Shown: piece by piece, positions 26,311 to 58,200 of the stretch | Position numbering within the stretch: position 1 is the first letter of the stretch | How the letters are laid out: each line of letters begins with the position of its first letter | Source of the DNA: Macrostomum lignano | Lineage: Eukaryota | NCBI GenBank assembly: GCA_002269645.1 | Contig: NIVC01001414.1 | Coordinates: 1-64,000, forward strand | Length of the DNA stretch: 64,000 bases | Reading direction: 5' to 3' | Program-made: the position numbers and the translations under genes | The notes under the pieces: generated by a model | Told to the model about the DNA's origin: nothing | The model's input: only the letters and a program-made list of their open reading frames with translations | The model's database searches: none

Positions 26311-26311
26311 G

Positions 26312-26612: not shown

Positions 26613-26633
26613 TGACGGACTGAGCTTGCTGCC

Positions 26634-29600
26634 ATGGCAGAGCGAGGGAAGCCACCATTTCCTAACAAAAAAGTAAGTAAAGTTCAAGTAAGAAAACTAA
26701 AAGTATAATCATATTTGTAGTCTTGACTGCAGTTGCGGAAACTCACTCACATGTTTGAATGTGCAGCTTGGGTGCCACAATTGCAGTTGCAGGAACTCAC
26801 TCACATGTTTGAATGTGCAGCTTGGGTGCCTCAATTGCAGTTGCAGGAACTCACTCACATGTTTGAATGTGCAACTTGGGTGTCTCAATTGCAGTTGCAG
26901 GAACTCTCTGACATGTTTAAATGTGCAGCTTGGGTGCCTCAATTGCAGTTTCAGGAACTCACTCACATGTTTGAATGTGCAGCTTGGGTGCCTCAATTGC
27001 AGTTGCAGCAACTCACTCACATGTTTGAATGTGCAGCTCGGGTGCCTCAATTGCAGTGGCAGGAACTCACTCACATGTTTGAATGTGCAGCTTGGGTGCC
27101 TCAATTGCAGTTGCAGGAACTCACTCACATGTTTGAATGTGCAGCTTGGGTGCCTCAATTGCAGTTTCAGGAACTCACTCACATGTTTGAATGAGAAGCT
27201 TGAGTGCCTCAATTGCAGTTGCAGGAACTCACTCAGCCGGACCCCAGCAACCGGGCAAGCGTCGGATCCTCACCAGCCGATCTCCAGACTCTCGCTCACG
27301 ACGTCATCCAAGGTGACTTCGGCCAGGTGCGGCGGCTGGCAACGCGCCAGCTGGTCACCAGCGCTGATGCAGCTCGTCGGACCGTCCTCATGCTGGTGGC
27401 CGACGCTCCTGAGACTCCCGTGCACACTGAAAAGTGCATATTGTACTTATTTGAGCTGGGCGCGAACCCCAAGGCGGCTGACGCGAACGGCGACACGGCT
27501 GCGCACCTGGCAGCCCGGCGGGACCACCTGCGGCTGCTGACGCTGCTATCGTTCGATGCGAAGTGGCTGCGGAACGACAACGGCGCCACTCCGCTGATGG
27601 AGGCGGCGCGGACTGGAAGCTGGAGATGCGCCAAGCACCTGCTGCACCTGCTCAGGCAGAGAAGGTTTAACGAGTGCAAGGAGCACGAAAACTCGAAGAG
27701 ATCGCGGCTGCTCAGACTGAAGGATCGCGAGGGTCGGACGGCGTCAGACCTGGCGAGGCTCAGCGGCCACTCAGAGCTGGCCAGCTACATCGAGCGGTGA
27801 GTGAGCAGTTCGCTGCTGTGTCCATCAAGTTTTGCAGCATTCGGCTGGCTATGGTGGCCAGAGCTGCAGTCTCAGGCCAGCCAATCAGAGCCAGTCAGCT
27901 GAACTTGTCTCTGTCTGACTGCTTGATGGACGAGAGCTGTGATTGGCTGGCTGCCTCCTAGCCAATGGGGTGCCGGTTGATCTCAGTCGAGAATGGAAGC
28001 TGTAGGGCCTCGGTGTGCAGTGAGAGTGTGTAGGTTGAGCTGCAGATGGAGAACTGGGAGGCTGTGCGTGAGTGCTTTGTGAGACATTGTGAGATGGAAG
28101 GAAACTCATGCTGCAGAAATGGAAAAGAGCTGCGTGTGAGAAGTCGGATGCGCTCTCGCCAATGCTGATTGTTGCAGAGCTGCTGCAGTCTTCTTGGAAA
28201 CTCCATCTGCGAGCTGCTCAGATAATCAGGAAATTCAGTTATCTAAATTTATTACCAAAATTCTATTGTAGAACTATAAACTTTTTAATGGCTGTCAAAG
28301 TTGTAAAATTTTAGAAACATTTGCTGCTCATTTTGGCTGTTGCAGGGAGATGCGGCTGGTTGTGAGCAAAGGTGGCAGGATCTTCGGCCTGACAGCCCAG
28401 GTGAGCGGAATCTGCGGTGCCGATGCGGCTGCAGCTGAGCAGCTGTGCTCAAATTTCCCGCTCGCCTTTGCAGGAGGAGGCGGATCGACAGGAACTGCAG
28501 CAGCTGGCCGAGGCGGGCGACTCGGCGGGGCTGCGGCGAGCGGCGACCCGCGGCAGCTGCGACCTGCCTGACAGAGATGGTTACACCGCGTTGATGTTGG
28601 CAGCTCACAACAGCTCGTGCGGTGATGAGGCTCTGTGGGAGCAGCTGGTGCAGCTGGGTGATCCCACATGTGCTGATACACGGGCTGAAATTTGCCTGCA
28701 CCATGCAGCCGGACCTGGAAACTCTGCTGCAGCCTCCGCTCTGCTGGCTGCCGGAGCCTCCGCCAATGTCAGGGAAGATCTGTGTGACTTTACGCCCCTC
28801 ATGGCGGCAGCCTTTGCGCCCCCCACCACCGCCGCCGCATTCGGTCGGGTTCTGCTGGACTCAGGGGCGGATTGGAGCCTGAAGGACATGCCGGGCAGGA
28901 CTGCGCTGGATTTGGCCACACAGGAGGGAAAGAGCGAACTGGCTGAGCTGCTGCGTGGGTGAGTTTCCATGGCGACTGAGAATGTCTCTCTGACTTTGAT
29001 TTATCATTGATAAAAATTATGCTGTAATTTATGATTGAATATTGAGCAGCTGACTGCAGTTGCTCAGAGTGGGCATTTTTACATTTTTGTAGTTTAAATG
29101 GGCAGCAGACACTGACTGAGCTTCATTGAGGAAGTTTGCATAGGTAATTTAATTTAAAATTTAATTTCATAGGTAATTTAAGCAAAAGGAAGAAATGAAG
29201 CACAGAGCATGATCTTCAACCTGAATTCCTCTAACTTTAAACTCCGCACTGCCTACTTAGGTACGGCGGCAAGATTTACTTCAACGAGCCTCTGGCACTC
29301 CCGTGAGTTCCTTCAGCACACACAGCTACAGCACACACAGCTACAGCACACACAGCTACAGCACACACAGCTACAGCACACAGCTACAGCACACAGCTCC
29401 AGCACACACAGCTACAGCACACACAGCTACAGCACACACAGCTACAGCACACAGCTACAGCACACACAGCTACAGCACACAGCTACAGCACACACAGCTA
29501 CAGCACACAGCTACAGCACACACAGCTACAGCACACAGCTACAGCACACACAGCTACAGCACACAGCTACAGCACACACAGCTACAGCACACAGCTACAG

Positions 29601-30756
29601 CACACACAGCTACAGCACACAGCTACAGCACACACAGCTACAGCACACAGCTACAGCACACACAGCTACAGCACACAGCTACAGCACACACAGCTACAGC
29701 ACACAGCTACAGCACACACAGCTACAGCACACAGCTAGATCATGCTAATTATCCCTCATTGCCTCAATTCGCATCCCCTCAGCCCCCCGTTCCTGGAGCG
29801 CTGGGACAAAGTTCGCCTCATCGGTCGCGGAGGCTCTGGCAAAGTCCACGAAGTTCGAACTGACACGGGCGTCACATGCGCTGCCAAGACTCTCAAACTG
29901 CCTGTGCAGCTCGGTGATGACCAAACCCCTGTGAGCAAGGAGATCCACAGAGCTGTCGAGAGCGAGAGAAACCTGTGCCGACTGCGGCATCCCAACATCG
30001 TCAGGTTCTTGCACATCGCTCAGCCGAAGCCCGCCAAAGTCGTTGTGTTCATGGAGCTGCTGGACGGCCGAAGCTTGGAGAGGTTTATCGGCAACAAGCC
30101 GCTGGACGAGCCAAAGATTCGAGACTTCAGCGAGCAGGTGAGCATTGTGCATCCTTGATGCTCCTGTTCCATGTTTTCATGAATGATGACTGCTCACTGA
30201 CCGACCGCTCGCAGATCTGCAGCGCGCTGCTCTACCTGCACAGCCAGCAGCCGCCCGTGATCCACAGAGACATCAACTGCTCCAACATAATTGTTCGTGC
30301 TGACAAGACCCGAATCAAGCTGATCGACTTCGGCCTGTCAATTAAGCTGGAGCAGTCAGTCAGCCACATCTCAGGCTCCACTCCGTTTCCCAAAGGCACT
30401 CTGAACTTCATGGCGCCAGAGCTGCTCGGAGCGGGACAGTCGGAGAGCGACAGCGTGCAGTACAGCAGAGAGTCGGACATCTGGGCGTTCGCTGCTCGGT
30501 CTTCCAGATGGCGTCCGGCGCGAGGCCGTTCGCGAACGCCAGGAGCTTCTTAGAAATGGCCCAGCTGATCGACAGGAGGGGCGCCCCCGCCCTGCCGGAC
30601 GGCCGGTCCGCAGAGCTGCAGGACTTCTACAGCCGCTGCACCACCAAGGACCGCAGGAAGAGAAAGTCAGCAGGGGAGCTGCTGGAGCACGAGTTTCTGA
30701 CGGGTGGGAAGCTGAAAACGCGATTGCTGGGCTCGCTTTTCGGTGTAAGGAAATGA
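26634..30756 (+). CDS. Ankyrin-repeat Ser/Thr protein kinase. Exons 26634-26672, 27225-27796, 28346-28400, 28474-28958, 29783-30137, 30215-30756
   Basis: All introns GT-AG with consistent phases (0,2,0,2,0). Ankyrin motifs GDTAAHLAA, GATPLMEAA, GRTASDLA, GYTALMLAA, FTPLMAAA, GRTALDLA. Kinase GRGGSGKV, AAK, alphaC Glu, HRDIN, DFG, GTLNFMAPE, SDIW. One 1-nt deletion near 30491 (F[G]CSVFQMASG). Confidence 0.88.
26727..27235. repeat. 54-bp tandem array (~9 copies) that includes the exon-2 splice acceptor
   Basis: Unit TTGCAGTTGCAGGAACTCACTCACATGTTTGAATGTGCAGCTTGGGTGCCTCAA; single copy in the paralogue at 42750-42810. Confidence 0.93.
29321..29737. repeat. (CACAGCTACAG[CA])n 11/13-bp minisatellite in intron 4 of the ankyrin-kinase gene
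   Basis: Same unit as 45596-46204. Confidence 0.95.
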
Positions 30757-33985: not shown

Positions 33986-34023
33986 CACGAGTGCGCTAAT
34001 TCTCACTGCATTGGCTGGCATAT

Positions 34024-36762: not shown

Positions 36763-38564
36763 CAGCGATGAAAAATTCCCCACTTGCTACCTTTAGTAGT
36801 ATCTGTAATGTAGTTGTGGAGGGAACTGCAACTGTGCTCACTGTGTACTGCAACTGCTCATTTTAATTTAATTTCATTTTATTTTATTGATTTATTTTTA
36901 CGCTAATATTTTATTTGTAAATTGAATTTAGGTAGTAAAAAGTTTTACAATTTCCGAATTAGCAGGGCCATCATTTTGATGGAGTCGGGGCTGAGCCCAA
37001 GCTCTAGGACAATATTCGGGATTTTTCAGGACCAGGAGCTCCTTCGGATCTTAGCTTTCTAATTTTCATTTATATGAGTATACCTGACTCAGTGTCCTCT
37101 CTGTCGTGGTCATCAGGGTCAGTGTCACCTGTCCCGGTGATAATACGCTCGTAGAGGCTCTGATAATGCTAGCATGAAGGCGAAATATTTATTCGGACTC
37201 AATGCATGCCCTTTCATTTCCGGATATAGATTGGAGTCCCTGTTGTGTGAGGCTGCATCTGAGCTTCATGGAAATCTTAAAATATTGAGTATGCAGTCTC
37301 CTCTTCAGCCTCATCTGAGGTTCCCTAGCTTGTATCTGAGGGCGTGGGGGAGGAGACGGGCTTGAGGGACTCAACCGTCATCTTTTTGATATTGACCCAG
37401 AATCTCCGGGGTTCCATGCTAACAACTATTTTTACATGAGTCTTCATAACGTCTATACCAGTGCATCCTAATGATGGAGTGGCTAGTTTTACAGATAGTA
37501 TGTGGAGCTAACTGCTTCCTGGATTTACGATCTGGGACAACTTCGGTAATTGTTTCGTGCATTTTCTCAATGAGTTTATCAATTACTATATTAATGGTAA
37601 TTGGGGAAAATATGGGAGCAGATAATGCTGCAATTTTCTATTTTACCCTGAAAGGCTTACCTAGTGGTTTCCAATTCGGTGTGCCAGAATCTCTTGGAAG
37701 GTATATTTGGGAGCCAATATGGAGCTGGGGTCTAAAATGACCCTCATGGTTATCGGGAGGTGGTGCTCACTGTCCGGGTCTTTACCGACTGAACAGGTTG
37801 GCTGCTCCGAGCCGGAAATTTTTCGTTTTCTCTGCGAATTGGTTGTAGCAGCGACTACTTAAAGTATTGCATGTATGGAATTTCCGCTGAAAATCCCTCA
37901 ATTCGGCTAATTCAGTGCAAGAATACCAATTTCATTTGGCAAAGTAGATCTGTCTGCAATTCTGCGATTTCATAATTATTATGAAATGCCCGACGGATCT
38001 GCAATAATTCTTTGGGATTATTTCATTCCATTTCTAAATCACCATGAGTTCAATAGCACGGGCAAGAAATGCTGCGTATGTAGATTCAACTGTATCCCGT
38101 GCTCAGCCATCTTAAAACTAGTTGCAATTTTAGTTGAACTCTAGCTAGTCTAGCTAAAACTAGTTACTCCTCCTGGCATCTTAAAGCAGTTGCAACAAAA
38201 CCTGAGAACATCTTGAATATGAATCCCAAATGAAGTATTTAGGCACATCATCACGATCGCACTTCAATTCACCCTCTACCCCTAACCCTTCTCTTCCTCT
38301 GCTATGGCTGGGGAGGCCTGCTATTTTTGTGGGAGGCGGAAAAACTGTGAGGGTATTACGCGATGTTTTTCGATGCTCCAATACCTGTTATCTTCTGCCA
38401 TCCAACAGCGGTGGAGGAAATGACAAGACCGGAGGAGGGGATATGCTTTTCTTTAATATTACCTTTCTAAATCTAAAACTAGCCGAGAAGCCGAGGCCAA
38501 TAAGTGGAGAAAAAATGTCTCTTTGGGCTTCCAGTTTGCGTATATTTATGAGCTCTACAATTTC

Positions 38565-40842: not shown

Positions 40843-42602
40843 TACCTTCCTGCCCCCATTTTTTCCTGCTCTGCCAAGCAGTGAAATAGGGAAATTTCAC
40901 AACGCCTAAAACAGGAAAATGCAGCCTCCTTCACATCGTCTAAATTTCATAACGCCTACAATCTTTGCAATTGCTTCTCTCTTTCACATTCAGTTGTGAA
41001 ATGAAATTTAGGTGATATGAAATTTAAGCGATGTGAAGTCATGTGCTTTAGACGTGAAATTTCACATTTAGGTGATGTGTAATCATGTACATGTGCTTTA
41101 AGCGTTGTGAAATTGTGTATAATCTTTTTTACAAATCAGTTGTTTTCGGATTTCTACGAAACATGTGCTGTTTTGGCATATAGAATTAAATTCAGCATTC
41201 GTTTAAATCCAAGTTTAAGGAATAATATTCCATTGGGGCTGCTCAGAAGATAGAGTTTGACTTTGAGCAGCTAGACTTTGCCTCCTATAGCACATTTTGA
41301 CCATTAATAGGGTTTGAGACAGACAGGGATCTAATGCACCTACCATGTACAGTTCCGAGTACAAAATGACAGCTGAGTAACGGACTTCTAAAAAGCAAAA
41401 TTAATTTGCCTGGGGTCGTACTGTGGTGTCTTTAACATTCCTTTCCGCTCACTGAGGCCACCTTCCCTCAGGTTCTCTTCAGAAACCCCTCGCTGTGTGT
41501 TCTAAGTCCCATTTGGTTCAAGGGGCCTTTCTTTGGCTTTTAGCCATGCAGTCATCATTCGCCGCCGCATGGGATTTTGTCAGCTTTTAGTTATTTATTG
41601 CCCCTCTTCATATTTTCTTGCATTGCTTTTTTTAGTCAAAAGCAGGGTTAATTTCTCGCTTTGTTGATTTACTCGTAGTTATACAAACCAACTCTTCCTC
41701 AAAGATAAATGTCACGTACAGGACAGGGAATTCCCGGGAGTCGACGGGGGCCCCGAATTAGTTTCCCGCCAGCCAATGAAACAATTCATTCCGTGAACCC
41801 AACTGTACATCTTTATATTCATGCTTTTTAAGTTTATGGTTCCTTTCGTTTAGGCCTTTTTATGCTGTTTTGCATGAATGTCTATGTCTCTGCCTCTTCA
41901 GAGACTATTTTCAGCCTCTTTTCTCTGAAATTTTCAGTTTCTACTGTTCACATAGACCTGCCCCACAATAGAGCTGACAATCTTTATCTCAGCATATCTG
42001 TGAGACTTAAGAAGAGCCTCAATGCTATTTCTGCCTAGAAACTGCGAAATAATCATGTTAATAAAAACTTTTCACACTCAATTACCAAGCATGCATCTAT
42101 GAGATTTCACATTTTCGAACTCATGGAGTTTACAGCCAGTGCAGTTGCGGCTTGCAGCACTATTTTTCGGTCAGAAATTTTGAGCAAAAGCAGCAGGCAG
42201 AGTAGAACACTTATTAACAATAATGTGCTCAAGCTGTTTATGTTTGCACTGATCTGACTTCACCGCAACACCGGAGTTGGCTTAAAAAGAGTATCATATT
42301 TACAATTTTAATTGCACCAATTTTACAAAAAATTCACAGTCGCACACTGAGTGCTTTAAGCAGCCATGCACTGTTTTTCAGCAGTTCTGCTGTTCCCTCA
42401 AAGCCAATGGGAGAGGCAGAAAGCTGGGCAGAGGCGGCCGCACAAGCCAGCAAAAGCAGCCGCAATCTGAGCAGGCAGGGTGAGAAGGAATTCGCTGCAG
42501 CTGCTCCAGAGCCAATAAAATCTGCTGCAGAGGCGACCGCTGCCCTGAGGACTCTCGGGCTGAGCTGAGACACCTGCGGCAGCCAGCACAGTGCGATTCA
42601 GC

Positions 42603-45600
42603 ATGTCAAGCGACTCAGAGGATTCTGATAAAGAAACACCATTTCCCGACGAAAAAGTAAGTCAAGAAAAAGTGAGAAAACTGAAGCACAATATTAACTT
42701 TACGCTTGATTGCAGTTTGCAGCTAGAACTGAAGTTTGAATTGATCTCAAACTCACATGTTTGAATGTGCAGCTTGGGTGATTTAAATTGCAGCTGCAGG
42801 AACTCACTCAGCCGGACTCCACCAACCGGGCAAGCGTCGGAGACTCACCAGCCGATCTCCACACTCTCGCCCACGCCGTTATCCGAGGTGACTTCGGCCA
42901 GGTGCGGCGGCTGGCAACGCGCCAGCTGGTCACCAGCGCTGATGCAGCTCGTCGGACCGTCCTCATGCAGGTGGCCGACGCTCCTGAGAGTCCCGTGCAC
43001 ACTGAAAAGTGCATCTTGTACTTATTTGAGCTGGGAGCGAACCTCAAGGCGGCTGACGCGAACGGCGACACGGCTGCGCACCTGGCAGCCCGGCGGGACC
43101 ACCTGCGGCTGCTGACGCTGCTGTCGTTCGATGCGAAGTGGCTGCGGAACGACAACGGCGCCACTCCGATGATGGAGGCGGCGCGGACTGGAAGCTGGAA
43201 ATGCGCCAAGCACCTGCTGCACCTGCTCAGACAGTACAGGTTCAATGAGTCCCAGAAGCACGGAAACTCGAAGAGGTCGCAGCTGCTCGGACTGAAGGAT
43301 CACGAGGGTCGGACGGCGTCGGACCTGGCGAGGCTCAGCAGCCACTCAGAGCTGGCCAGCTACATCCAGCGGTGAGTGCCTTTGTGCACCTGTCTGGGGC
43401 GTGTGAGAAGTCGGATGCGCTCTCGCCAATACTAGGCCATATGAATATAATGAGCAACTGCTCCAACTCAAGCATTTACTCGGGCCTGTATGAATAAACT
43501 GAGAAATTGTTGATGAGAAAATGCTCATGAGAATTTTCTCAAGAGAATTTGCTCCGATTTCAGAGCAAATAATACTCTGAAATGTACTGATCGTTGCAGA
43601 GCTGCAGCAGTCCTTTTGGAAACGCCACCTGAGTCGGAGCAATTGCTCAATCGTGAGAATGTTCTCTGAATCTGAGCAAGTGCTCATCGGGGGTATGAAT
43701 AAAGAATAAACTCAAACTCTGAGAATATTCTCCGTAGCTTGAGTAACTGATCAGAATGTTTTTGGCCAAGGCAAAAATCGTTCATACGGCTTCTTGCCGT
43801 TAGTACGGCTTTTTACGGCTTTTTAGGGTTTCTTACTTACGACTGCTTTTTCTCTCGCTTCTCAGAGCAAACTGGCTTAAAAGTTCAGAAGCAAGTTTTT
43901 GGCCACAAACAGAAAAAAGAGCCCATGCTCCAGAGTTTGAAAATCTCAAGAAAAGCTTAGTTTCAGTTTTCAGGAGTTTAGCTTTGACTGCTTCTATCAG
44001 ATTTTTACACTGCGACTCGTTCTTGAGTCTGCCAGGAGGCTGCCTCAACGTTGTCTCACGATTTCGCGGGCAAGACGGCAGATTCCGTGCCCGCTGTTTT
44101 AGTCTATGGCCAATCGTGAAACAACATAGTTCTGACTATGGATTTTCAGGCAGGAATTAGCTGAATCCTCGGGCTTCGCATTTTCTCTGAAATCGGAGCA
44201 AATTCTCTTAAAAAAATTCTCATGAAAAATTTCTCAGTTTATTCATACAGGCCCGAGTAAATGCTTGAGTTGGAGCAGTTGCTCATTTTATTCATATGGT
44301 CTAATTTGAAATTTCTGTTTACTAACTCATCATGAAAATTCTATTGTACACTTTACGCTCGTAAATTCAATTTTAGTGATTGCTGTAGTCGGATTTTAGA
44401 AAATTGAGAATTTGCTGCTCATTTTTATTATTGCAGGGAGATGCGGTTGCTTGTGGATGCAGATAATTCAATCTCCGGCCTGACAGACCAGGTGAGCGGC
44501 ATCTGCGGTGCCGATGCGGCTGCAGCTGAGCCGCTGTGCTCAATTTTCCCGATTGCCTTTGCAGGATGAGGCGGATCGACAGGAACTGCAGCGGCTGGCC
44601 GAGGCGGGCGACTCTGCGGGGCTGCGGCGAGCGGCGACCCGCGGCAGCTGCGACCTGCCTGACAGTAGGGGTTTCACCGCGTTGATGTGGGCAGCTGGGA
44701 ACAGCTCGTGCGGTGATGAGGCTCTGTGGAAGCAGCTGGTGAAGCTGGGTGACCCCGCCTGTGCAACAGAAACCTCTTTAAGCTGCCTGCATTTTTCTGC
44801 CGAGGCTGGCAATTCTGCCGCAGCCTCCGCTCTGCTGGCTGCCGGAGCCTCCGCCAATGCCATAGAGGCGGGGATGAGTGAATACACGCCCCTCATGCTG
44901 GCAGCCATTTCGGCGCCCCCCGCCACCGCTGCCGCAGTCGGTCGGGTTCTGCTGGACTCAGGGGCGGATTGGAGCATGATGAATTACGGCGGCATGACTG
45001 CGCCGGAATTCGCCACACTGCAGGAGGAAAAGAGTGAACTGGCTGAGCTGCTGCGTGGGTGAGTTTCCATGGCGACTGAGAATGTCTCTCTGACTTTGAT
45101 TTATCATTGATTAACATTATGCTGTAATTTATGATTGAATATTGAGCAGCTGACTGCAGTTGCTCTAAGTGGACATTTTTACATTTTTGTAGTTTAAATG
45201 GGCAGCAGGGACTGACTGAGCTGCATTGAGGGAGTTTGCAGTGCAGTTTGACTGCAGATTGCCAGTTGAATATTAATGTTCAGCTGCCTGCGAGCTGTGA
45301 GACACCAGCAAGCAGTTTGCTGCGACATTTGAGTTAAAAATTTAAATAGGCAATTTTCTGATGTTTAAAATCTATGATTGTAAACAAGCAATTACAAGCA
45401 ATTTTATTTAGTAATTTATTTAAAAAAATTGATGAAATTACCTACAGAGCATGAGTTCTCACCTGAATTCCCTTGAATTCAGACTCCACACTTCCTATTT
45501 AGGTGCGACAACAAGATATACTTCGACGAGCCTCTGGCACTGCCGTGAGTTCATTTGGCACATAAATATTTAGCTACAACAGACTAAAACAGCCAACACA

Positions 45601-47560
45601 GCTACAGCACACAGCTACAGCACACACAGCTACAGCACACAGCTACAGCACGCAGCTACAGCACGCAGCTACAGCACACAGCAACAGCACACAGCTACAG
45701 CACACACAGCTACAGCACACAGCTACAGCACGCAGCTACAGCACACAGCAACAGCACACAGCTACAGCACACAGCTACAGCACGCAGCTACAGCACACAG
45801 CAACAGCACACAGCTACAGCACACACAGCTACAGCACACAGCTACAGCACGCAGCTACAGCACGCAGCTACAGCACACAGCTACAGCACACAGCTACAGC
45901 ACGCAGCTACAGCACGCAGCTACAGCACACAGCAACAGCACACAGCTACAGCACACACAGCTACAGCACACACAGCTACAGCACACAGCTACAGCACGCA
46001 GCTACAGCACGCAGCTACAGCACACAGCTACAGCACACAGCTACAGCACGCAGCTACAGCACGCAGCTACAGCACACAGCTACAGCACACAGCTACAGCA
46101 CGCAGCTACAGCACGCAGCTACAGCACACAGCTACAGCACGCAGCTACAGCACGCAGCTACAGCACACAGCAACAGCACACAGCTACAGCACACACAGCT
46201 ACAGCCAGAAGAAGTGTTGTCATAGCACACACCGCTGAGAAAAATGCGAAGCTTTTCCAACCATTCCAGAGGACAAGTTGTCGCGGACCATGCTTATGAC
46301 GAGAAACTGAGTGACGATGAAGAAGATCCGTGAGTCAATGTTAATTGTGTCATGCAGAAACTGCTTAACAAATGTTCACTGATTAGTTAGAGCAATTGAA
46401 TGTTTCGTTATGTCAATTAAATACTTTTCAGAAACCTCAAAGGAGCCAAGTGTGTTAAGCAAGTTAGACATCAACTGTCAAGGTGCTTCTACATAATTTG
46501 CTTCTATAAATTTTGTGTTGTCAGTATAAAACCACATTGAGCATCTGCTGCATTCCAGGCACGAAGAAGATTTCTATCCAGTGACGAACCCGCAAGGCTA
46601 CTGCCTGATCATCAACATCAGCAAGTACGACTCTGGAAGTGATATCACACTCAGTCTTGCAGAGCGTCAAGGTTCAGATCGTGATGTTGACCGAGTGAAG
46701 CAGATATTCGAGAGGTTGCGCTTCATCGTCAAGATAAAAAAGGACCTCACTGCTGAGCAGTTGGATGATTTCCTCCATGAGATTAAAAAGTCACGGGACC
46801 TTGCCAAGCACGGCAGTTTTGTCTGCTTCTTGATGGCGCACGGCAGCCACGACTGCATCTACGGTAAGAACGGCGTGCCCTGCGAAATTCGAAACCTGAC
46901 GGAAAAGTTCAAGGTAAGCCACTATAGCTAATAATATCATGTTTGTTATTTTATGAGCGTATATAGGCAAGAACAGGGATATGAAAATTCCTAAGAATTC
47001 TTAAGAGTAGAAACCAATGATATTGAAACGAGAGTAATGTTTAGCCTGTTTTTCGTCTCTGCAAAAGGCTAGGCTAAACTGTACTCTTAGTTTATAAGGC
47101 CGAAGACTCCACTGCCAATACCATCGCATCACAGAGCTCTGTCTGCCGCAGCCTTGAAGGAAAGCCGAAGGTGTTCTTCATCCAGGCCTGTCGCGGCAGC
47201 CGTCGCGACCGAGCTGTTGCTCGGAGCTCTCGTGAGCAAACGGACGAGGCAGGCGCTCCGGTTTACAACTCCGCAATCCGCCCTGCAGAGGGCGACTTTC
47301 TGCTCTGCTACGCCACCACTCCAGGCTCAGCCGCCTTTAGAAACATCGACTCGGGCTCGCGGTACGTGCAGACTGTTTGCGAGTTCATCGAGAAGTACTT
47401 CCGTGAGCTCGACCTAATTACCATTATGACCAAGGTGAGCGGCTACTTGCACAAGAACCCGGTTCAGGTGAAAGGCGGCCTGTATCACGTTGTTCCGCAG
47501 AAAGTCGACCAGCTTTCAAGCCTGGTTAGCTTCGATCCAGATAGAGCTCGGAAAGCTTAG
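42603..47560 (+). CDS. Ankyrin-repeat caspase. Exons 42603-42656, 42800-43371, 44437-44491, 44565-45058, 46270-46329, 46559-46913, 47135 (or 47099)-47560
   Basis: GT-AG introns with consistent phases. Exons 1-4 are paralogous to the kinase gene. Caspase FYPVTNPQGYCLIIN, RQGSDRD, FLMAHG (His), GKPKVFFIQACRG (Cys), EGDFLLCYATTPGSAAFRN..GSRYVQ. Confidence 0.88.
43433..44303. mobile_element. Non-autonomous DNA transposon with long TIRs (>75 bp near-perfect, ~130 bp overall) in intron 2 of the ankyrin-caspase gene
   Basis: TAGGCCATATGAATATAATGAGCAACTGCTCCAACTCAAGCATTTACTCGGGCCTGTATGAATAAACTGAG is the reverse complement of 44230-44303; TA at both ends. Confidence 0.85.
45596..46204. repeat. (CACAGCTACAG/CGCAGCTACAG)n minisatellite in intron 4 of the ankyrin-caspase gene
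   Basis: Same family as 29321-29737. Confidence 0.95.
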
Positions 47561-50200: not shown

Positions 50201-51259
50201 CCAATCCAAATCCCAAACGCACAAAATGATAAAGTCAGTCACACAGGCTGAGAACTTTCAGCAGTTTTATGAGTTGAGCTGTTTGAGATCTTGAAAAGTA
50301 CAAATTCAGATAAATTATTAATAATGTGAGAAATCTCATTGCACTGATGATTTGGGATTTGAGCACAAAAGAAAACACTGGGTGTGAGGCTGAGCTGTCA
50401 ACTCAATTCAGCTCTGATGGCAGCAGAGGCAAATGCAGATTAGCAGACAAAAATATGTCCCAATTAATAAATAGTAAACTGCACATACTTTACATTGCTG
50501 CACTGCAGTGCCATCCAATGTTGATGTGGCAGAGAAACTGAAACAGCAATTATTTGATCTGAGCAATGCAGGTGAATATAAATGATTAATGCAGAACTGC
50601 CGTGTCAGTCTGTTGCACCCAATAAATAAATCCAAAGATTATCAAAGGGTTACAAAATGCACACCTGAACTGTGTATAAGATTAGCAAAATAAGCTGTGA
50701 GTACAAAATGCAAAATTATTAATAAATTTATAAATAAACAGCATTTGAGCACAAAGCGCCATTGATGAGGTGCCACAGCAGGGTGAAGTGAAGGCAGCAA
50801 AGTCAGACACAAATTCATGCAGATTGCAGTCAAGCGAGCCATATTCAGTACTTGCAGTAGCACAGCTGGGTGCACCGGGTGCAGACTTGGTCAGTGAAAA
50901 GCGGGATGCTCAGGCGGTGCCCTCAGCGGCTCATTCGGAATTCCCCTGACAGCTGCGGGATTGAAAATGTTGTCCAATCAGCTCAGGGGTGTCCAATCAA
51001 TGTCTGCAGTGGATGGACAGTCCCATTGAAGACTCTGAATTGACCTGAACTACAAATGACCTCAGATGACCTCACGGACCTAATTATGACCTTAGATGAC
51101 CCCACAGACCTAATCGTGACCTTAGATGACCCCTAAAGACCTAATCATGACCTTATAGGACCCTAAAACTTGAACATCCTGGAATCCTGTAACTTAAACC
51201 GAAGTAACCCAGGCATCAAGAGCGTGACCTCAATCGACCCCGTCGACTCCCGCCCTTAC

Positions 51260-52198
51260 CCGCTCGGCGCCGCCTCCGCAGGCGCTTCGACTTCGCCCAC
51301 CGGGCCGCCGCCGCCGCCGCCGCAAAGCGTCAAAGCGTTATCAGCAAGCTGAGCATCGGCCAGTCTGGCCTCCAGAGCCGCCAGCTGCAGCCGGGCTTCA
51401 TCCCGCTCGGCTGTCAGGGCGGCGATGACGGCGTCCTGCTGGTCCAGCCTCGCCGTCGCCTCGCCCAGCCTCTCGTTCAGGCGGGCGACTCTCGCCTCGC
51501 CGCGGCGTCGGCACAGGTCGAGCTGGCGACTGGCGAGCTTGTTGGCTGTGCTCAGGTACTCAGTGAGGCGCTCTTCGTGCTGGTCCTGAGGGCATTGGGG
51601 CTGGGGTCTGCTGGGATCTGGGTGTGCTCAGGTGGGATCTGGATGTGCTCAGCTGGGATCTGGGTGTGCTCATGTCGGGTCTGGTTGTGCTCAGGTGGGA
51701 TCGGGGTGTGCTCAGCTGGGATCGGGGTGTGCTCAGCTGGGATCGGGGTGTGCTCAGGTGGGATCTGGATGTGCTCAGGTGGGATCTGGGTGTGCTCATG
51801 TCGGGTCTGGTTGTGCTCAGGTGGGATCGGGGTGTGCTCAGCTGGGATCGGGGTGTGCTCAGGTGGGATCTGGGTGTGCTCAGGTGGGATCTGGGTATGC
51901 TCAGGTGGGATCTGCTAGGGTCAGACATGCAGGATCTGCTGGGGTCTGACCGGACCTGCTGCCCCACTCACCAGCTGCTTGTCCTTCTGCTGCTGCAGCT
52001 GGGCCTCAAACCGTTCCTCCATGGTCTCCATCAGGCGGTCCCGCTCGGCGATCAGCTCCCGGCGGATCTGCAGCTCGCGGGCCTCCACCGCCTCGTCCAG
52101 CTGGCGGCGGGACTGCCGCAACGAGGCGATGACCGCCAGCAGCTCCTGGGGTGGAGTGGGGGACTGTGGCTTGTGAGGGTTACAGCTGACAGATAGGC

Positions 52199-52286
<88 letters not shown>

Positions 52287-55200
52287 TTCTTAATTATATG
52301 TCTATGGTCTCCGACTCCGAACCTGTACAACTAAGTTTTGTTTGAGCTGCGCCAGAGCTAAATTCAGTGTTAACCTTCTCTTGCTATCTTTCTTAAGACT
52401 CTCAATAAACGCCGAGTTATTATAATCAAATAAGACATAGGCCTAGTTCCTGTCTGGTAGTTCAAGATGAAGAACGTCCTGATGGAGCGAGAACTTTGGG
52501 AAGTTGTTGATGGTACAGAGACACTTGCTGAGGACGCGACCAACGAGGTCAAAGTGCAGTTCAAGCGGCGTGCGAACAAAGCCCTAGCGACTATCGTATT
52601 GGCTGTTGCGGATAGTCAAATTCATCTAATTGAGGATGCAGAAACTCCGAAGGAAGCGTGGGATAAGCTTCAAGCATATTTCGAGCAGAGTTCGCTGGCA
52701 AATAAATTGTATCATAATCGGAAACTACAAGCGCTCAAGATGGTGGAAGGTGCATCCATGCAGGAGCATGTTAATCAGTTCAAGGATATCGTCAAACGAC
52801 TGTCGGCTATCAGGGCAGGTGTTCCGAGGACTATCAAGTCACGATTTTGCTAAACAGTTTGCCGAAGTCATATGACGGGTTGATCACTGCTCTGGAATCG
52901 CGAGCGGGCGACTTGACGATGAATTTCGTACAATCAACAATCATCGTACTAAGACAATTCAACAATCAACAGCACCAGAGTGTCAGACCAAAATGTATCA
53001 AAGCAAGATTGGTAGCCAAAGGCAATCAAGGTTGTATTGCTCCAGCTAGAATCCTGTCTTCCACAGTCGTTCTAAGCACATTGATATCCGTCACCATTTC
53101 GAGCGTGGGAAGTTGGTCGGTGGAACTTTAACCTCTATTTGACTGCAGTTTTAGGCGCTTATAACCGTTCCCGACGGATAGGCCGAAAACAGCCATAGAC
53201 AGTTTTCAAATTTACGATCATAAATGTTGCTGCTACCACCGTTCCCGCCTAGATGAAGGAATGAAATTCTATTGATTATAAATATGGTTATATATAGCAG
53301 TCAGTAGTCCTTATACATAATATTTATATGGCCGTTTTCGGCCTCTAGTCGTCGGGAACGGCTGTGGTAAAAAATCCAACAAATCTGACCCATAGAGATT
53401 GATTTTATGCCGTCTAGCTTGGAGGTAGACAGAATGGACGAAAACGGCCATCCGTCTGCCTATGGTTAAAGTTACTTTACTGTCCGTCAGAGGAAATGGT
53501 CGCTGACATTCCCACCAAAAGCACTGTCTAATGCCAAGTTTCAAGTGCTCAAGGAACTGATTCATGTTCGCTAATAAACTGCTAACTTCTTTATCTAACT
53601 TTGATATTCAAGACACAATATGATTACAATATAAGACTTTCTTAATAGAGACACACAACAGACTCACAACAGATACACAGCAGACACAGAGCAGACACAG
53701 CAGACGCACAAGCAGACCCACCTCCTTATCCATCTGGGCCAAGTCCGCCATCTCAGCCTCCTCTTCATCAGCGTAAGTCACATCCAAAGCCTCGAGCTCA
53801 TCGTCCTCATCGGCCAGTCTCTGCTCCCCATCTTGTCTTCTCCCAGTCCTGACGCGGCCGCCGGCCCTCCCAGACGCCGCAGACTTGGACGCCACTCCGT
53901 ACCCAGGAGACGCGGTGGCAGCAGCCGCCAGCCGCAGGCGCTTGGGCGTTGGCTCGCTCACGATGACGCTGCGCGCCAAGCTGCTGAACTTCAGCGCGTT
54001 GAAGGTCTCGTCGAACAGCGCCGGGCACTGGGAGATGTTGACAATCATCGCCGCCTGCCCGCTGCCGCTGAAGTAGGGCTGCAGCAGGCGGGTGAGCTTC
54101 GAGTCCCGGAACGGCACCAGCATGGAGGCTCGGGATTTCGCTGATTTCTCTGCAGAGTCTCAACGCAGCGGCGCAGGGTCAGCAGGCTGGAGTTGATGCT
54201 GCCGGCCTCTCGGGTGCGCTCGCCTGCCGTGCCGGCGTGGCGCTGCCGCTCCGAGCCGGCGAGGTCGCAGAAGGTCAGGCTGGACACCTGCGGGACGGCG
54301 GGGCACTGGGATCTGGAATGGGGATATGGGTGATGGGAGATGGGATCTGGGAGATGGGATTTGGGATATGGGTTGTGGGAGGTGGGATGTGGGAGATGGG
54401 AGATGGAAGAAGGGATTTGGGAGAAGGGATCCGAGAGACGGAAGAGAGGATATGGGATTGGGGACCTGCGATTAAGGATTTGGGATTGATGATCTGGGAT
54501 TGGGGATCTGGAAGATGGGATGTGGGATAAGGACGATTATGATTTTGGAGATAAGATTTGGGAGATGGGATCTAGTATATAAGAGATTGGTTATGGGAGA
54601 TGGATCTGGGGTTGGGGATCTAGGGTTGGGGATCTGGGATTGGGGATCAGAGATTGGGGATCTGGGATGTGAGACGGAAGAAATGAGATGGTATAGTGTA
54701 CTATCATGTTGGGCTTCTCCTTTGCTCTCGCTTTAGCCTTCCCCCACGTGCCTCGGCATCGTTTGTACGCCCAAGCACTGTTACGCAACAGTGGCACGCT
54801 GTGCTCACTAGGCTCGCATGTACTCAAACTACTATATATATGCTTAAATATAAGGCCAAGAAAGCTCAATTCCGGCACCCACACAAGCGCACTACAGATG
54901 GGATGTGGGAGATGGGTGATGTGAGATGGCATTTTGGATCTGGGAGATGAGAGATGGGATTTGGGTGATGCGAGATGGAATCTGGGATTAAGGATTTGGG
55001 ATTGGAGATCTGGGATTGGGGATCTGGGATTGGGGATCTGGGATTGGGGATCTGGGATTGGGAATCTGGGATTGGGAATCTGGGATTGGGGATCTAGGAT
55101 TGGGGATCTGGTGCCAAAGGCAGTGAGTGAGCAAAGGACTCGGCCCCGCAAACCTTCTCACCTGACTGAAGCGAGGCGAAGGTCTGTCAGCGCAGCGCAC

Positions 55201-58200
55201 CAACCTGATGGAGAACAGCGCGTGACTCCTGGAAGACTGCTGGTTCAGCTTGGTGGCAGCCAGGTGCTGATTGTGTTTGCCTAGCAGCGCCAACCTGAAG
55301 GCCTCATCAGCGCTTGACACCGGCAGGCAGCGAAGGCCTTTGACGTACACGGAGCCCGTGCGGTCCGCCCGCAGCTCCAAGGCCGTCCTGCTGGGCGCCC
55401 GACGGCTCAGCGGCTCCAGCAGGTCGTAGACGATTTCGTTGTAGATCTCGGCGCAGGACACCCACACTGAGCAGCGGCTGCCGACTTTGCCAGCGGCTGT
55501 GGTGTCTGCGGCATCAGCTGGGAGCTGCGGACTCGGGCTGGGGAGCTGCAGAGCCGCTCGCCTGCGAATGTTTCAGCGTTTGAGCAGAGATGGCTGCTGG
55601 GATGAAGCTGGGATGGCTGCGGCTTCAGGGTGAGGGCCAAGGACTCAAGAGGAACTGCTCAGACTGTGCAGGGACTGCTCAAAGGAGAACTGCTCAGACT
55701 GTGCAGGGACTGCTCAAACGGGAACTGCTCAGACTGTGCAGGGACTGCTCAAAGGGGAACTGCTCAGCCTGTGCAGGGACTGCTCAAAGGGGAACTGCTC
55801 AGACTGTGCAGGGACTGCTCAAAGGGGAACTGCTCAGATTGCAGGGACTGCTCAAAGGGGAACTGCTCAAACTGTGCAGGGACTGCTCAAAGGGGAACTG
55901 CTCAGCCTGTGCAGGGACTGCTCAAAGGGGAACTGCTCAGACTGTGCAGGGACTGCTCAAAGGGGAACTGCTCAGACTGTGCAGGGACTGCTCAAAGGGG
56001 AACTGCTCAGACTGCAGGGACTGCTCAAAGGGGAACTGCTCAGACTGTGCAGGGACTGCTCAAAGGGGAACTGCTCAGACTGTGCAGGGACTGCTCAAAG
56101 GGGAACTGCTCAGACTGCAGGGACTGCTCAAAGGGGAACTGCTCAAACTGTGCAGGGACTGCTCAAAGGGGAACTGCTCAGACTGTGCAGGGACTGCTCA
56201 AAGGGGAACTGCTCAGACTGCAGGGACTGCTCAAAGGGGAACTGCTCAGACTGTGCAGGGACTGCTCAAAGGGGAACTGCTCAGACTGTGCAGGGACTGC
56301 TCAAAAGGGGAACTGCTCAGACTGTGCAAGGAATGCTCAAAGGGGAACTGCTCATAAACAATCGTGATTGATGATGTTTGCCACCCCAGCCTCACCAGTC
56401 CCCAAGCTGGGCATCGCAGGCCTCAAACCGACTCAATACTGCTCGAGTCTCCGCCAGCGCCGCCCTGGCCTCATCCGGCGCCAGCGGGGCAGCCTCGCTG
56501 AAGCTGACCGGCCGGAACGGCAGCAGCTGCTCGGCGCCGCTCAGCTGACCGTCAAGGCGCCGGAACAGGTCGGCGAGGGCGCGCGGCAGCAGGCCGGGAG
56601 ACTGAGGGGTGCCCTGGGAAAATAACGGAGGCGCTAATTAATGCCAAGTTTAACAAAGTTTCAAGCCGCGCACTGACTAATCGCAACCGCTTTTGCTTAA
56701 CTTTGCCTGAATTATAGTTAAACATACGCTAACACGGGGGTTGGCAAAGTTTTATATTGCAAAAATGCCACATGAAAAATCTAGCACATGACGGCAGGCC
56801 GGGCCCGAGGATTGAGGAGGAAAGAAGGGAGAGGAGAGGAGAGAAGGGAGGAGAGGAGAAAAGGGAGAGGGGAGGAGAGAGGAGAGAAGGGAGAGGAGAG
56901 AAGAGAGAGGAGAGGAGAGAAGGGAGAGGAGAGGAGAGGAGAGGAGAGAAGGGAGAGGGGAGGATAGAGGAGAGAAGGGAGAGGAGGGGAGAGAAGGGAG
57001 AGGACAGGAGAGAAGGGAGAGGAGAGGGGAGAAGGGAGAGAAGAGAAGAGAAGGGAGAGGAGAGGAGAGGAGAGGAGAGGAGAGAAGAGAAGGGAGGAGA
57101 ATAGAAGAGAGGAGAGAAGAGAGGGGAGAAGGGAGAGAAGAGGAGAGAGGAGAGAAAGGAGAGGAGAGGAGAGAAGGGAGAGGAGAGGAGAGAAGGGAGA
57201 GGAAATTGAACAGATTTGAGATGAGACACAGACCCTGAACGGAAGTTTCGAAGGACCAAAAGGCCGGGTAGAAACTTGGCGGGCCGCGTATGGCCCGCGG
57301 GACGGAGTTTGCCGACCCCTACTCTAAATTAATTGATAATTGAATACACCTGGCCTAATGGGCAGATGTGCAACCGACAGCTCAGCCGCAGCTATTGCGC
57401 GGCGCATCTAAAGGCTGCGTACGGCTGTTCAGTCCAAGGACTGGGGGTCGCCACACACACCCTCAATTACCCCAGCTAATGCTGGCACCCATTTTACAGC
57501 TGGCTCAAGGATACAAATTGTTCCGAGTGGGTCGAGAATCGAACCCCCGACCTTCAAGTCGTGAGTCAGACACTCTGATCACTGAGCTACAACCCCAGTT
57601 TTGATTTTTCAACTTAAAAGTGGCCAACACTGCATAGAAGACTCACCTGCACTGTAAAAGTCTTTCCCGAGCTTGTCACCCCATAGTTGAACAGCAATCC
57701 ACTGCTCAGATCGCCCTCAGCCAGCTGGCGCACCGTCTCAGCCACCGTGCCCGCGTACAGGCCCTGCTGATCTGCCGTCTCATCGAACACGCCACTAAAT
57801 GTGAACCTGTTGCTCACCCGCTCGCCTCCACCGCCTCCTCCCCCGTTTGCTGAGGCAGAATTCGATAATTTTGACTCGTCCAATCCAGTATTCGCCTGCT
57901 GACTCTGCAGCGTTGAGGGCTTCTGGCCACCAGCCAGCCGTTAGCGGAGTCTGCGGTGAAGCAGCGGCCGGTGGGGCTGCTGAGGTCCAGGCCGGCGCAG
58001 GCGGTACAGCTGAGCTGCTCGTTGGGCGTCACTGGGCGAACTCGCAGGTACACCTGGGGGAGAGGATGGAAAGGGGTTGAAATACCTGATTAACTACTTC
58101 AGGGTGTCTTTGAGTCGTTACTTCTGAGACACCCTGGATGCGTTACACAGTTAGAGAACTACAGTTTTACAATCAAAACTCAGAGTAGCCTATATTGAAC

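What the first reader, a model, noticed from the sequence alone, without database searches (positions are those of the whole stretch)
46270..47560. Caspase with an ankyrin prodomain and an acidic, Asp-rich linker exon
Seen: no CARD or DED; a 60-nt exon encodes GQVVADHAYDEKLSDDEEDP between ankyrins and p20, and the intersubunit linker has EQTD. Asp-specificity arginines (RQGS, AFRN) and QACRG are present. Established: initiator caspases are activated by prodomain-driven dimerisation and then autocleave after Asp. Inference: a self-contained ligand-activated caspase needing no adaptor. I know of no characterised ankyrin-prodomain animal caspase, but have not searched databases.
Basis: partly seen in the sequence, partly recalled or inferred. 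Interest (0 to 1): 0.7.

Follow-up and report, generated by a model that had tools for sequence, protein, structure and literature searches.

The report
Flatworm caspase with ankyrin-repeat prodomain
This is a real, transcribed gene of the free-living flatworm Macrostomum lignano that joins about 390 residues of ankyrin repeats to an intact caspase; the architecture has been described by sequence analysis in parasitic flatworms but never tested at the bench, and here its ankyrin part is a cassette shared with a neighbouring kinase gene.

Summary
Window 42603-47560 (+) is a nine-exon gene. Its translation is identical to GenBank PAA68165.1 (BOX15_Mlig019701g1, 704 aa), a model built from RNA-seq. 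Pfam finds ankyrin repeats plus Peptidase_C14 and no CARD or DED.

The 60-nt acidic exon (46270-46329), QACRG, the His, both S1 arginines and EQTD are all present.

The architecture is not new. "ANK caspases" were reported in parasitic flatworms in 2014 and 2024, but none has been studied biochemically. That literature says free-living flatworms lack them, and this locus contradicts that.

Additional results:
- The promoter, exons 1-5 and a microsatellite intron form a cassette duplicated 16 kb upstream, where it is spliced to a MAP3K/STE-like kinase.
- M. lignano also has ANK-kinase-caspase proteins.
- Among 24 paralogues, the hypervariable residues of the second ankyrin block sit on the canonical ankyrin binding face (P=6.5e-12).
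- Both linkers are predicted to be disordered, and each carries a conserved x-x-T/A-D motif.

Most likely this is an initiator-like caspase recruited through its ankyrin cassette. Adaptor-free ligand activation remains untested.

The parts
42603..42656 (+). Exon 1: ATG and MSSDSEDSDKETPFPDEK
   Evidence: GT donor. The nine-exon model translates exactly to P0231/PAA68165.1.
42794..43371 (+). Exon 2: ankyrin block 1 (aa 19-211), strongly conserved among paralogues
   Evidence: Pfam Ank_2/Ank/Ank_4. AF2 pLDDT is above 90. Mean column entropy is 0.43 bits.
44437..44491 (+). Exon 3 (55 nt): EMRLLVDADNSISGLTDQ, the connector between the two ankyrin blocks
   Evidence: AG/GT sites and a consistent phase. 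Present in the paralogues.
44565..45058 (+). Exon 4: ankyrin block 2 (aa 230-394), four repeats with hypervariable binding-face positions
   Evidence: Pfam Ank_3/Ank_5. 16 of 22 hypervariable columns fall on ANK positions 2, 3, 5, 13, 14 and 33, P=6.5e-12. Pairwise dN/dS is about 0.92.
45503..45544 (+). Exon 5 (42 nt): CDNKIYFDEPLAL, the last exon of the shared cassette
   Evidence: The homologous exon, with the same splice sites, is in the tandem kinase gene (29261-29302) and in locus L001. It is included in the transcript-based models of both kinase and caspase paralogues.
45596..46205 (.). (ACACAGCTACAGC)n microsatellite in intron 5, where homology with the tandem kinase gene ends
   Evidence: TRF finds 46 copies. 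The blastn homology between the two tandem genes ends inside it.
46270..46329 (+). It carries the candidate prodomain cleavage motif VVAD414 (codon 46286-46288).
   Evidence: The motif is VVTD, IVTD, VFTD or AQTD in paralogues. AF2 pLDDT is below 50. Indels against the paralogue are in frame.
46432..46482 (+).
   Evidence: Present in P0231, and its homologue is in P0001/P0002. Its length is a multiple of three, so skipping keeps the frame. A WormBase model of a paralogue skips it.
46559..46913 (+). Exon 8: p20 N-terminal part, with R481 (46665-46667) and H539 (46839-46841)
   Evidence: Alignment to caspase-3; codon coordinates.
47135..47560 (+). Exon 9: QACRG (C582 at 47189-47191), intersubunit linker with EQTD (D600 at 47243-47245), p10 with R632 (47339-47341), stop TAG
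   Evidence: The linker aa 584-614 has pLDDT below 50.
42273..46012 (+). Duplicated cassette: upstream region, exons 1-5, their introns and part of the microsatellite. It is homologous to 26017-29745.
   Evidence: blastn gives 82-93% identity in colinear blocks, and nothing after the microsatellite.
26634..30756 (+). Tandem paralogue: the same ankyrin cassette spliced to a protein kinase domain (STE/MAP3K-like)
   Evidence: tblastn. The exon map onto WormBase model P0010 is exact except for one residue. Pfam Pkinase E=1.2e-48. The best PDB matches are MAP2K5, ASK1, MAP3K2 and PAK1.

Best explanation
The locus is one gene for a 704-aa cytosolic zymogen made of three parts.
- An N-terminal ankyrin cassette of about 390 residues. 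Block 1 is conserved and block 2 is variable.
- A disordered acidic linker of about 40 residues.
- A complete Asp-specific caspase domain.

I think it most likely works like an initiator caspase whose death-fold prodomain has been replaced by ankyrin repeats.
1. The ankyrin cassette binds a partner.
   - The variable face of block 2 binds a paralogue-specific ligand.
   - Conserved block 1 binds a common partner or the protein itself.
2. Binding brings zymogens together.
3. The zymogens dimerise and cut themselves at EQTD600 in the intersubunit linker.
4. They also cut at VVAD414 in the acidic exon, which releases the protease from the cassette.

The same cassette is wired to a MAP3K-like kinase in the tandem neighbour and to kinase plus caspase in other paralogues. 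One kind of recognition module therefore appears to feed either a death output or a stress-kinase output.

**Shown:** gene structure, transcription as one ORF, domain content, catalytic and S1 residues, disordered linkers, conserved Asp motifs, cassette sharing, and the position of the variable residues.

**Inferred:** binding, clustering, autocleavage and the biological trigger.
For: **One gene, one ORF**
- The nine GT-AG exons have consistent phases and translate exactly to PAA68165.1.
- That annotation derives from StringTie/TACO and de novo transcripts. The transcripts were cut at mapped trans-splice and poly(A) sites and then run through TransDecoder (PMC5730564).
- The window equals contig NIVC01001414.1.
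- Paralogues on other contigs have the same exon plan.

**Competent caspase**
- Pfam C14 scores E=3e-45 and caspase-3 scores E=1.3e-39, with Arg, His, Gln, Cys and Arg aligned.
- Foldseek gives target-normalised TM 0.84-0.88 to caspases 3, 7, 8 and 9.

**Zymogen-like layout**
- AF2 pLDDT is above 90 in the ankyrin and caspase domains.
- It is below 50 only at aa 1-5, 407-447 (both small linker exons) and 584-614 (intersubunit linker).

**Cleavage motifs**
- The intersubunit Asp is kept as EQTD, EETD, ETID, VSTD, ESTD or HETD in paralogues down to about 40% identity.
- The Asp at the start of the acidic exon is kept as VVAD, VVTD, IVTD, VFTD or AQTD.
- Paralogue P0001 has lost the catalytic Cys (QAGRG) and has also lost the linker Asp.

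**Initiator affinity**
- The prodomain is long.
- The nearest single-domain relatives outside Macrostomum are mostly DED caspases.
- The literature places an M. lignano kinase-prodomain caspase and the ANK caspases next to DED caspases.

**Recognition module**
- Hypervariable columns of block 2 fall on ANK positions 2, 3, 5, 13, 14 and 33 (P=6.5e-12), while the same positions in block 1 are conserved.
- The cassette is shared with kinases.
Against: - No biochemical or expression data exist for this or any ANK caspase, so every mechanistic step is inference.
- By sequence against solved structures, the caspase domain is closest to the executioners caspase-3 and caspase-7. My NJ tree has weak deep support.
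- The binding-face positions of ankyrin repeats are also the least structurally constrained. Their variability, with mean dN/dS of about 0.92 in block 2, could be relaxed constraint in a recently duplicated polyploid genome. Pairwise dN/dS at those codons is saturated and uninformative.
- The small linker exons diverge about as fast as introns, so motif conservation rests on few residues.
- AF2 gives no reliable information on how the domains pack (pTM 0.63).
Confidence: 0.5

Rival explanations
1. Executioner-type zymogen with a targeting or autoinhibitory prodomain. The caspase is a constitutive dimer like caspase-3/7. An upstream CARD caspase activates it by cutting at EQTD600. The ankyrin cassette only localises it or recruits particular substrates, as ankyrin subunits do for other enzymes.
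For: - The best solved-structure matches by sequence are caspase-3 and caspase-7.
- M. lignano keeps a CARD caspase and flatworms keep APAF-1 (PMC11463336).
- The same cassette on a kinase fits a substrate-recruitment role.
Against: - A 445-residue prodomain is not an executioner feature.
- The closest non-Macrostomum relatives in the full-library search are mostly DED caspases.
- The published tree puts ANK caspases beside DED caspases.
Confidence: 0.22
2. One reading: an adaptor-free sensor. The variable face of ankyrin block 2 binds a foreign or damage-derived ligand directly, and that alone oligomerises and fires the caspase. This would make the family an innate-immune receptor set.
For: - The family has expanded within this lineage and carries swappable effectors.
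- Hypervariability falls on the canonical binding face.
- No death-fold domain is present.
Against: - Block 1 is highly conserved at the same surface positions, which suggests an obligatory common partner.
- No ligand, induction data or site-level selection test is available.
- The variability can be explained by relaxed constraint.
Confidence: 0.15
3. Gene-model artefact. A separate ankyrin gene ends at LRG-TGA, because the stop overlaps the exon 4 donor at 45059. A short stand-alone caspase starts at the in-frame ATG at 46244 or at a trans-splice site. Annotation pipelines then fused the two.
For: - Reading through the exon 4 donor gives an immediate TGA.
- An in-frame ATG lies 26 nt upstream of the acidic exon.
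- WormBase has short or partial caspase models for this family (P0056-P0058) and ankyrin-only models (P0003, P0006).
- M. lignano uses trans-splicing, and about 7% of its assembled transcripts are precursor mRNAs that encode two or more proteins.
Against: - The RNA-seq-based model contains both parts in one ORF and was checked for trans-splice and poly(A) cuts.
- All junction phases match.
- At least four diverged paralogue groups on different contigs have the same fused plan.
- The WormBase model for this very locus, P0057, itself joins ankyrin exon 4 to the p20 exon.
- The ATG at 46244 is absent from the paralogues.
Confidence: 0.05
4. A decaying recent duplicate. The gene is intact by chance in a neopolyploid, highly duplicated genome and has no distinct function. 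The variability reflects drift.
For: - Mlig_3_7 has 180 Mb of duplicated blocks.
- dN/dS is 0.7-0.9 in the ankyrin exons.
- One paralogue is already catalytically dead.
Against: - The ORF is intact across nine exons.
- All catalytic residues are kept.
- dN/dS is 0.36-0.48 in the caspase exons, even against a dead paralogue.
- Block 1 is strongly conserved.
Confidence: 0.08

Closest known systems
ANK caspases of parasitic flatworms (Schistosoma and other Neodermata; Lee et al. 2014, Krasovec et al. 2024, PMC11463336)
   Same: A flatworm caspase with p20/p10 preceded by ankyrin repeats in place of CARD or DED, presumed to be an initiator. None has been characterised biochemically.
   Different: - This one is in a free-living, early-branching flatworm, although that paper states free-living flatworms lack ANK caspases.
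- Its cassette is shared with a kinase family and with ANK-kinase-caspase proteins.
- Orthology with the parasite genes could not be tested here, because no parasite sequence appeared in any search.
- M. lignano has a second, unrelated ANK-caspase type (P0188). In my tree it groups with DED-type caspases and may be the true counterpart.
Caspase-8/-10 (DED initiator caspases)
   Same: Long non-catalytic prodomain, an intersubunit linker with an x-E-T-D type site, a second Asp site between prodomain and p20, and phylogenetic proximity in the published tree and among the nearest relatives found here.
   Different: There are no DEDs and no FADD in flatworms, so recruitment must use ankyrin-mediated rather than death-fold contacts.
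Caspase-3/-7 (executioners)
   Same: Best sequence and fold matches among solved structures. The catalytic and S1 residues are identical.
   Different: The prodomain is 445 residues against about 25. The residue before the p10 S1 Arg is Phe (AFRN), where caspase-3 has Trp (SWRN).
M. lignano ANK-kinase-caspase proteins (BOX15_Mlig018903g1-3, P0142 group), probably the 'kinase-like prodomain caspase' of PMC11463336
   Same: Homologous ankyrin cassette (E about 1e-47) and homologous caspase domain, in the same species.
   Different: They carry a kinase domain between the cassette and the caspase, and the window gene does not. Identifying them with the published sequence is my inference, because the supplement was not available.
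Ankyrin-plus-kinase proteins (ILK, RIPK4/ANKK1) and ASK1
   Same: The tandem paralogue joins ankyrin repeats to a Ser/Thr kinase. The kinase is closest to MAP2K5, ASK1 and PAK among solved structures.
   Different: The order is ankyrin then kinase, as in ILK, but the kinase is STE-like rather than TKL. No relationship beyond domain type has been shown.

Membership tests
Caspases (MEROPS C14A) | Caspase p20/p10 fold | tested here: met
   Pfam Peptidase_C14 E=3.1e-45 over profile positions 2-213 of 233. The AF2 model matches caspases 3, 7, 8 and 9 with target-normalised TM 0.84-0.88.
Caspases (MEROPS C14A) | Catalytic His-Cys dyad (xHG ... QACxG) | tested here: met
   H539 in LMAHG and C582 in QACRG align with the caspase-3 dyad. 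Both are invariant in the six-sequence family alignment.
Caspases (MEROPS C14A) | S1 pocket Arg-Gln-Arg that selects Asp at P1 | tested here: met
   R481, Q580 and R632 align with caspase-3 R64, Q161 and R207 and are invariant.
Caspases (MEROPS C14A) | Asp-directed endopeptidase activity and activation by cleavage or dimerisation | not testable with these tools
   Only indirect evidence: a disordered intersubunit linker (aa 584-614) that contains EQTD600, with the Asp conserved in paralogues.
Flatworm ANK caspases (PMC11463336) | Ankyrin repeats N-terminal to p20/p10 in one polypeptide | tested here: met
   One ORF in the transcript-based model PAA68165.1, identical to the window model. Pfam finds Ank_2, Ank, Ank_3, Ank_4 and Ank_5 plus C14.
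Flatworm ANK caspases (PMC11463336) | Membership of the monophyletic ANK-caspase clade with the parasite sequences | not tested
   No neodermatan ANK caspase appeared, so none could be put in a tree. The only indirect link is that the paper places an M. lignano kinase-prodomain caspase as sister to that clade.
Flatworm ANK caspases (PMC11463336) | Restriction to parasitic flatworms, as claimed in the paper | tested here: not met
   M. lignano is free-living and has at least four diverged groups of cassette-type ANK caspases plus P0188. This contradicts the claimed distribution but not the architecture.
Initiator caspases with death-fold prodomains (caspase-2/-8/-9/-10, CED-3, Dronc) | CARD or DED prodomain | tested here: not met
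   Pfam finds no CARD or DED at E up to 0.01. The N-terminal 400 residues fold as ankyrin-type helical repeats.
Executioner caspases (caspase-3/-6/-7) | Short prodomain (under about 30 residues) | tested here: not met
   445 residues precede the p20 core.

The most novel reading that the evidence does not exclude
Macrostomum has built a surveillance system without death-fold domains. A family of ankyrin receptors has a second repeat block that diversifies at the ligand-binding face. Exon shuffling through a microsatellite-bearing intron wires these receptors alternately to a caspase, a MAP3K-like kinase or both. Each paralogue would sense a different foreign or stress ligand and trigger death or stress signalling without a separate adaptor. 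This would be a flatworm analogue of inflammasome or NLR logic.
Probability: 0.18. Interest if true: 0.8.

Novelty: new member of a known kind. Interest (0 to 1): 0.45.

Why it matters
- **Distribution.** ANK caspases have been presented as an innovation tied to parasitism in flatworms. Finding several diverged, transcribed ANK caspases in a free-living, early-branching species undermines that link. It suggests either an older origin or repeated invention.
- **The published 'kinase-prodomain caspase'.** The locus offers a concrete explanation for the kinase-prodomain caspase reported in M. lignano. It belongs to one family in which the same ankyrin cassette is joined to a kinase, a caspase or both.
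- **Tractability.** M. lignano has transgenesis (PMC5730564) and, to my knowledge, RNAi. How a caspase is activated without CARD, DED, FADD or a known platform can therefore be tested directly in it.

Tried and rejected
Cluster look-up then led to the deposited 704-aa protein.
2. **Retrieving parasite ANK caspases** for an orthology test failed four times.
   - The full-length search was swamped by ankyrin hits.
   - The caspase-domain search returned 11 hits.
   - The full-library HMMER search gave none in its top 150.
   - The profile search gave only generic caspases 3, 6, 7 and 8.
   - The supplement of PMC11463336 is not held.
3. **Exon-versus-intron conservation** as evidence for the small exons is weak. 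The paralogues are young enough that introns still align, at 58-69% against 59-69% for the two small exons. Only the preserved frame and splice sites speak for them.
4. **Pairwise dN/dS at the 24 binding-face codons** is saturated (pN and pS about 0.5) and decides nothing.
5. **A stand-alone caspase starting at ATG 46244** was considered and rejected, because the ATG is not conserved in paralogues.
6. **The sister clade to the Macrostomum caspases** (P0090, P0108) comes from metagenome contigs of an unidentified eukaryote and gives no taxonomic information.
7. **A first NJ run** with Biopython's distance calculator timed out and was redone with numpy.
8. **No paper mentions Mlig019701**.
Full report
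**What is there**

The window is eukaryotic DNA with short GT-AG introns and many tandem repeats. Translating the region and joining open frames at canonical splice sites gave an eight-exon model of 687 aa with consistent phases. Protein searches returned only Macrostomum lignano sequences as close relatives.

A cluster look-up then found GenBank PAA68165.1 (BOX15_Mlig019701g1, 704 aa; P0231). It is identical to my model plus one further 51-nt exon (46432-46482). The nine-exon model translates exactly to it.

The gene lies at 42603-47560 of contig NIVC01001414.1 of assembly GCA_002269645.1. These are the same coordinates as in the window, so the window is the first 64 kb of that contig.

**Checking the observation**

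- **Domains.** Pfam finds Peptidase_C14 (E=3.1e-45) and five ankyrin models, with no CARD or DED.
- **Catalytic residues.** Against solved structures the best match is human caspase-3 (E=1.3e-39). The alignment matches five residues, in caspase-3 numbering from my own knowledge:
  - R481 matches R64.
  - H539 matches H121.
  - Q580 and C582 match Q161 and C163.
  - R632 matches R207.
- **EQTD.** It sits at aa 597-600 in the intersubunit linker.
Skipping the 51-nt exon keeps the frame, and a WormBase model of a paralogue does skip it, so both forms may exist.

**Is it one gene?**

The main rival was a fusion artefact.
- Reading through the donor after the last ankyrin exon gives an immediate TGA.
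- An in-frame ATG lies just upstream of the acidic exon.

Four results argue against it.
- **RNA-based annotation.** The GenBank annotation of this assembly was built from RNA-seq, using StringTie/TACO and a de novo transcriptome. Transcripts were cut at experimentally mapped trans-splice and poly(A) sites and then run through TransDecoder (PMC5730564).
- **An independent model.** The WormBase model of this same locus (P0057) also joins an ankyrin exon to the p20 exon.
- **Paralogues.** The paralogue BOX15_Mlig016858g2 on another contig has the same exon plan, including all three small exons. At least four diverged groups of M. lignano proteins carry the same cassette followed by a caspase.
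- **The ATG.** It is not conserved in paralogues.

I put the artefact at about 5%.

**Structure prediction**

AlphaFold2, run with a 34-sequence family alignment, gives mean pLDDT 83.9.
- The ankyrin region (about aa 15-400) and the caspase core are mostly above 90.
- Only aa 1-5, 407-447 and 584-614 fall below 50.
- The two internal low-confidence stretches are the two small linker exons and the intersubunit linker that contains EQTD.
- The caspase part matches caspases 3, 7, 8 and 9 with target-normalised TM 0.84-0.88.
- No solved structure covers both parts.

**Cleavage motifs**

In family members down to about 40% identity:
- The intersubunit linker keeps an Asp in an x-(E/S)-T-D-like context: EQTD, EETD, ETID, VSTD, ESTD and HETD.
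- The start of the acidic exon keeps an Asp after a small residue: VVAD, VVTD, IVTD, VFTD and AQTD.
- Paralogue P0001 has QAGRG in place of QACRG and has also lost the linker Asp. This fits the idea that the Asp matters only when the enzyme is active.

This is motif evidence only.

**The cassette**

The window holds a second copy of the ankyrin exons 16 kb upstream.
- **Extent of the homology.** Region 26017-29745 matches 42273-46012 at 82-93% identity. The match runs from upstream of exon 1 through exons 1-5 and their introns, and ends inside a (ACACAGCTACAGC)n microsatellite.
- **What follows the microsatellite.** The upstream copy continues with kinase exons (Pfam Pkinase E=1.2e-48). The kinase is closest to MAP2K5, ASK1, MAP3K2 and PAK1 among solved structures. 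The downstream copy continues with the caspase exons.
- **The 42-nt exon.** Transcript-based models of ANK-kinase paralogues include the homologous 42-nt exon.
- **Other architectures.** M. lignano also has ANK-kinase-caspase proteins. There are three GenBank copies on different contigs and three WormBase models. It further has Ras-caspase and LRAT-caspase proteins.
- **Ankyrin-cassette tree.**
  - The window cassette sits in a well-supported crown clade (bootstrap 100). Kinase-bearing, caspase-bearing and ankyrin-only members are intermixed there.
  - Deeper branches mostly carry caspases.
- **Caspase-domain tree.**
  - All Macrostomum long-prodomain caspases form one clade (bootstrap 73).
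  - A different ANK caspase of M. lignano (P0188) falls elsewhere, among DED-type caspases.
  - Deep nodes are weakly supported in both NJ trees.
- **Synonymous divergence.** Between this gene and P0001, dS is 0.11 in ankyrin block 1 but 0.27-0.39 in the caspase exons. This suggests gene conversion or recent exchange of the 5' cassette.

**The variable face**

I compared 24 crown-clade cassettes.
- **Blocks.** Block 1 (exon 2) is nearly invariant, with mean entropy 0.43 bits. Block 2 (exon 4) has clusters of hypervariable columns spaced about 35 residues apart.
- **Anchoring.** I anchored each of the four block 2 repeats on the residue just before its first helix. These anchors agree with the AF2 helix starts at 268, 303, 338 and 375.
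- **Enrichment.** 16 of the 22 columns with at least 1.9 bits fall on ankyrin positions 2, 3, 5, 13, 14 and 33 (hypergeometric P=6.5e-12). To my knowledge these positions form the canonical target-binding face and are the ones randomised in designed ankyrin binders.
- **Block 1.** The same positions in block 1 are conserved.
- **Caveats.**
  - I chose the anchors after seeing the variable columns.
  - These positions are also the least structurally constrained.
  - Mean dN/dS in block 2 is about 0.92.
  - Pairwise estimates at those codons are saturated.

Diversifying selection is therefore plausible but not shown.

**Mechanism**

I commit to an initiator-like mechanism at about 0.5.
1. The ankyrin cassette mediates recruitment and clustering.
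2. Proximity-induced dimerisation follows.
3. The zymogen cleaves itself at D600 and D414.

The sequence-level anatomy is shown, and every functional step is inferred. The rivals are:
- an executioner-type zymogen whose cassette targets or inhibits it (0.22);
- a decaying duplicate (0.08);
- a gene-model artefact (0.05).

**Comparison with what is known**

PMC11463336 (2024) describes 'ANK caspases' as a monophyletic group restricted to parasitic flatworms. According to that paper:
- They were first seen in Schistosoma (Lee et al. 2014).
- They are sister to DED caspases.
- Free-living flatworms lack them.

No other paper in the library treats the subject. The architecture is therefore known, but only from sequence analysis.

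This locus adds three things:
- ANK caspases exist, in several diverged copies, in a free-living flatworm.
- The reported kinase-prodomain caspase is probably an ANK-kinase-caspase member of the same family. This is my inference, because the supplement was not available.
- The prodomain is a mobile cassette shared with kinases.

Orthology with the parasite genes could not be tested, because no parasite sequence was retrievable.

**Verdict**

The feature is real and was read correctly. The gene is already deposited as a hypothetical protein and belongs to a published but uncharacterised architectural class, so I file it as a new member of a known kind. Interest is moderate (0.45). It corrects a published distribution claim and offers a tractable system, but nothing about its function has been shown.

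Noticed in passing
window 26634-30756 (+): Tandem paralogue with the same ankyrin cassette spliced to a STE/MAP3K-like protein kinase. Exons are 26634-26672, 27219-27796, 28346-28400, 28474-28958, 29261-29302, 29783-30137 and 30215-30756. It matches WormBase model P0010, which lacks exons 1 and 5.
   Followed up: yes
window 45596-46205 and 29314-29737; L001 14285-14658: The same (ACACAGCTACAGC)n microsatellite lies in the intron that separates the shared cassette from the effector exons, in all three loci examined. Homology between the kinase and caspase genes ends inside it, so it may be the recombination site for effector swapping.
   Followed up: partly
window 26728-27235: A 54-bp unit repeated 9.4 times duplicates the end of intron 1 and the first bases of exon 2 of the kinase gene. 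This gives a row of potential alternative acceptor sites.
   Followed up: no
L001 10001-15978 (NIVC01003438.1; P0001, BOX15_Mlig016858g2): This paralogue has QAGRG in place of QACRG and REESRY in place of REQTDE in the intersubunit linker. It is probably a catalytically dead pseudo-caspase that keeps the whole exon plan.
   Followed up: partly
M. lignano proteins P0142/P0217/P0218 (BOX15_Mlig018903g1-3), P0071, P0114/P0088, P0188: Other unusual caspase architectures occur in the same species. Pfam confirms ANK-kinase-caspase, Ras-caspase and LRAT-caspase, plus a second ANK-caspase type whose repeats were not matched by this cassette in a phmmer search at E<=1e-5.
   Followed up: partly
window 42794-43371 versus 46559-47560, compared with L001: Synonymous divergence from the P0001 locus is 0.11 in ankyrin block 1 but 0.27-0.39 in the caspase exons. 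This suggests gene conversion or recent exchange of the 5' cassette among paralogues.
   Followed up: partly
window 50923-54123 (-): A kinesin-domain gene (299-aa product) is annotated on the opposite strand downstream of the caspase gene.
   Followed up: no
window 12342-13288, 33149-36763, 55647-57203 and others: Many long tandem arrays with periods of 4-54 bp, several strongly purine-skewed, fill the intergenic space. They explain the GC-skew spikes in the composition profile.
   Followed up: no
L003 2295-3884 (ENA metagenome scaffold; P0090): The closest non-Macrostomum relatives of this caspase clade (NJ bootstrap 94) are intronless 529-aa caspases with an unassigned N-terminal region. They come from an unidentified eukaryote in metagenomes and lie next to a tetraspanin gene.
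   Followed up: partly
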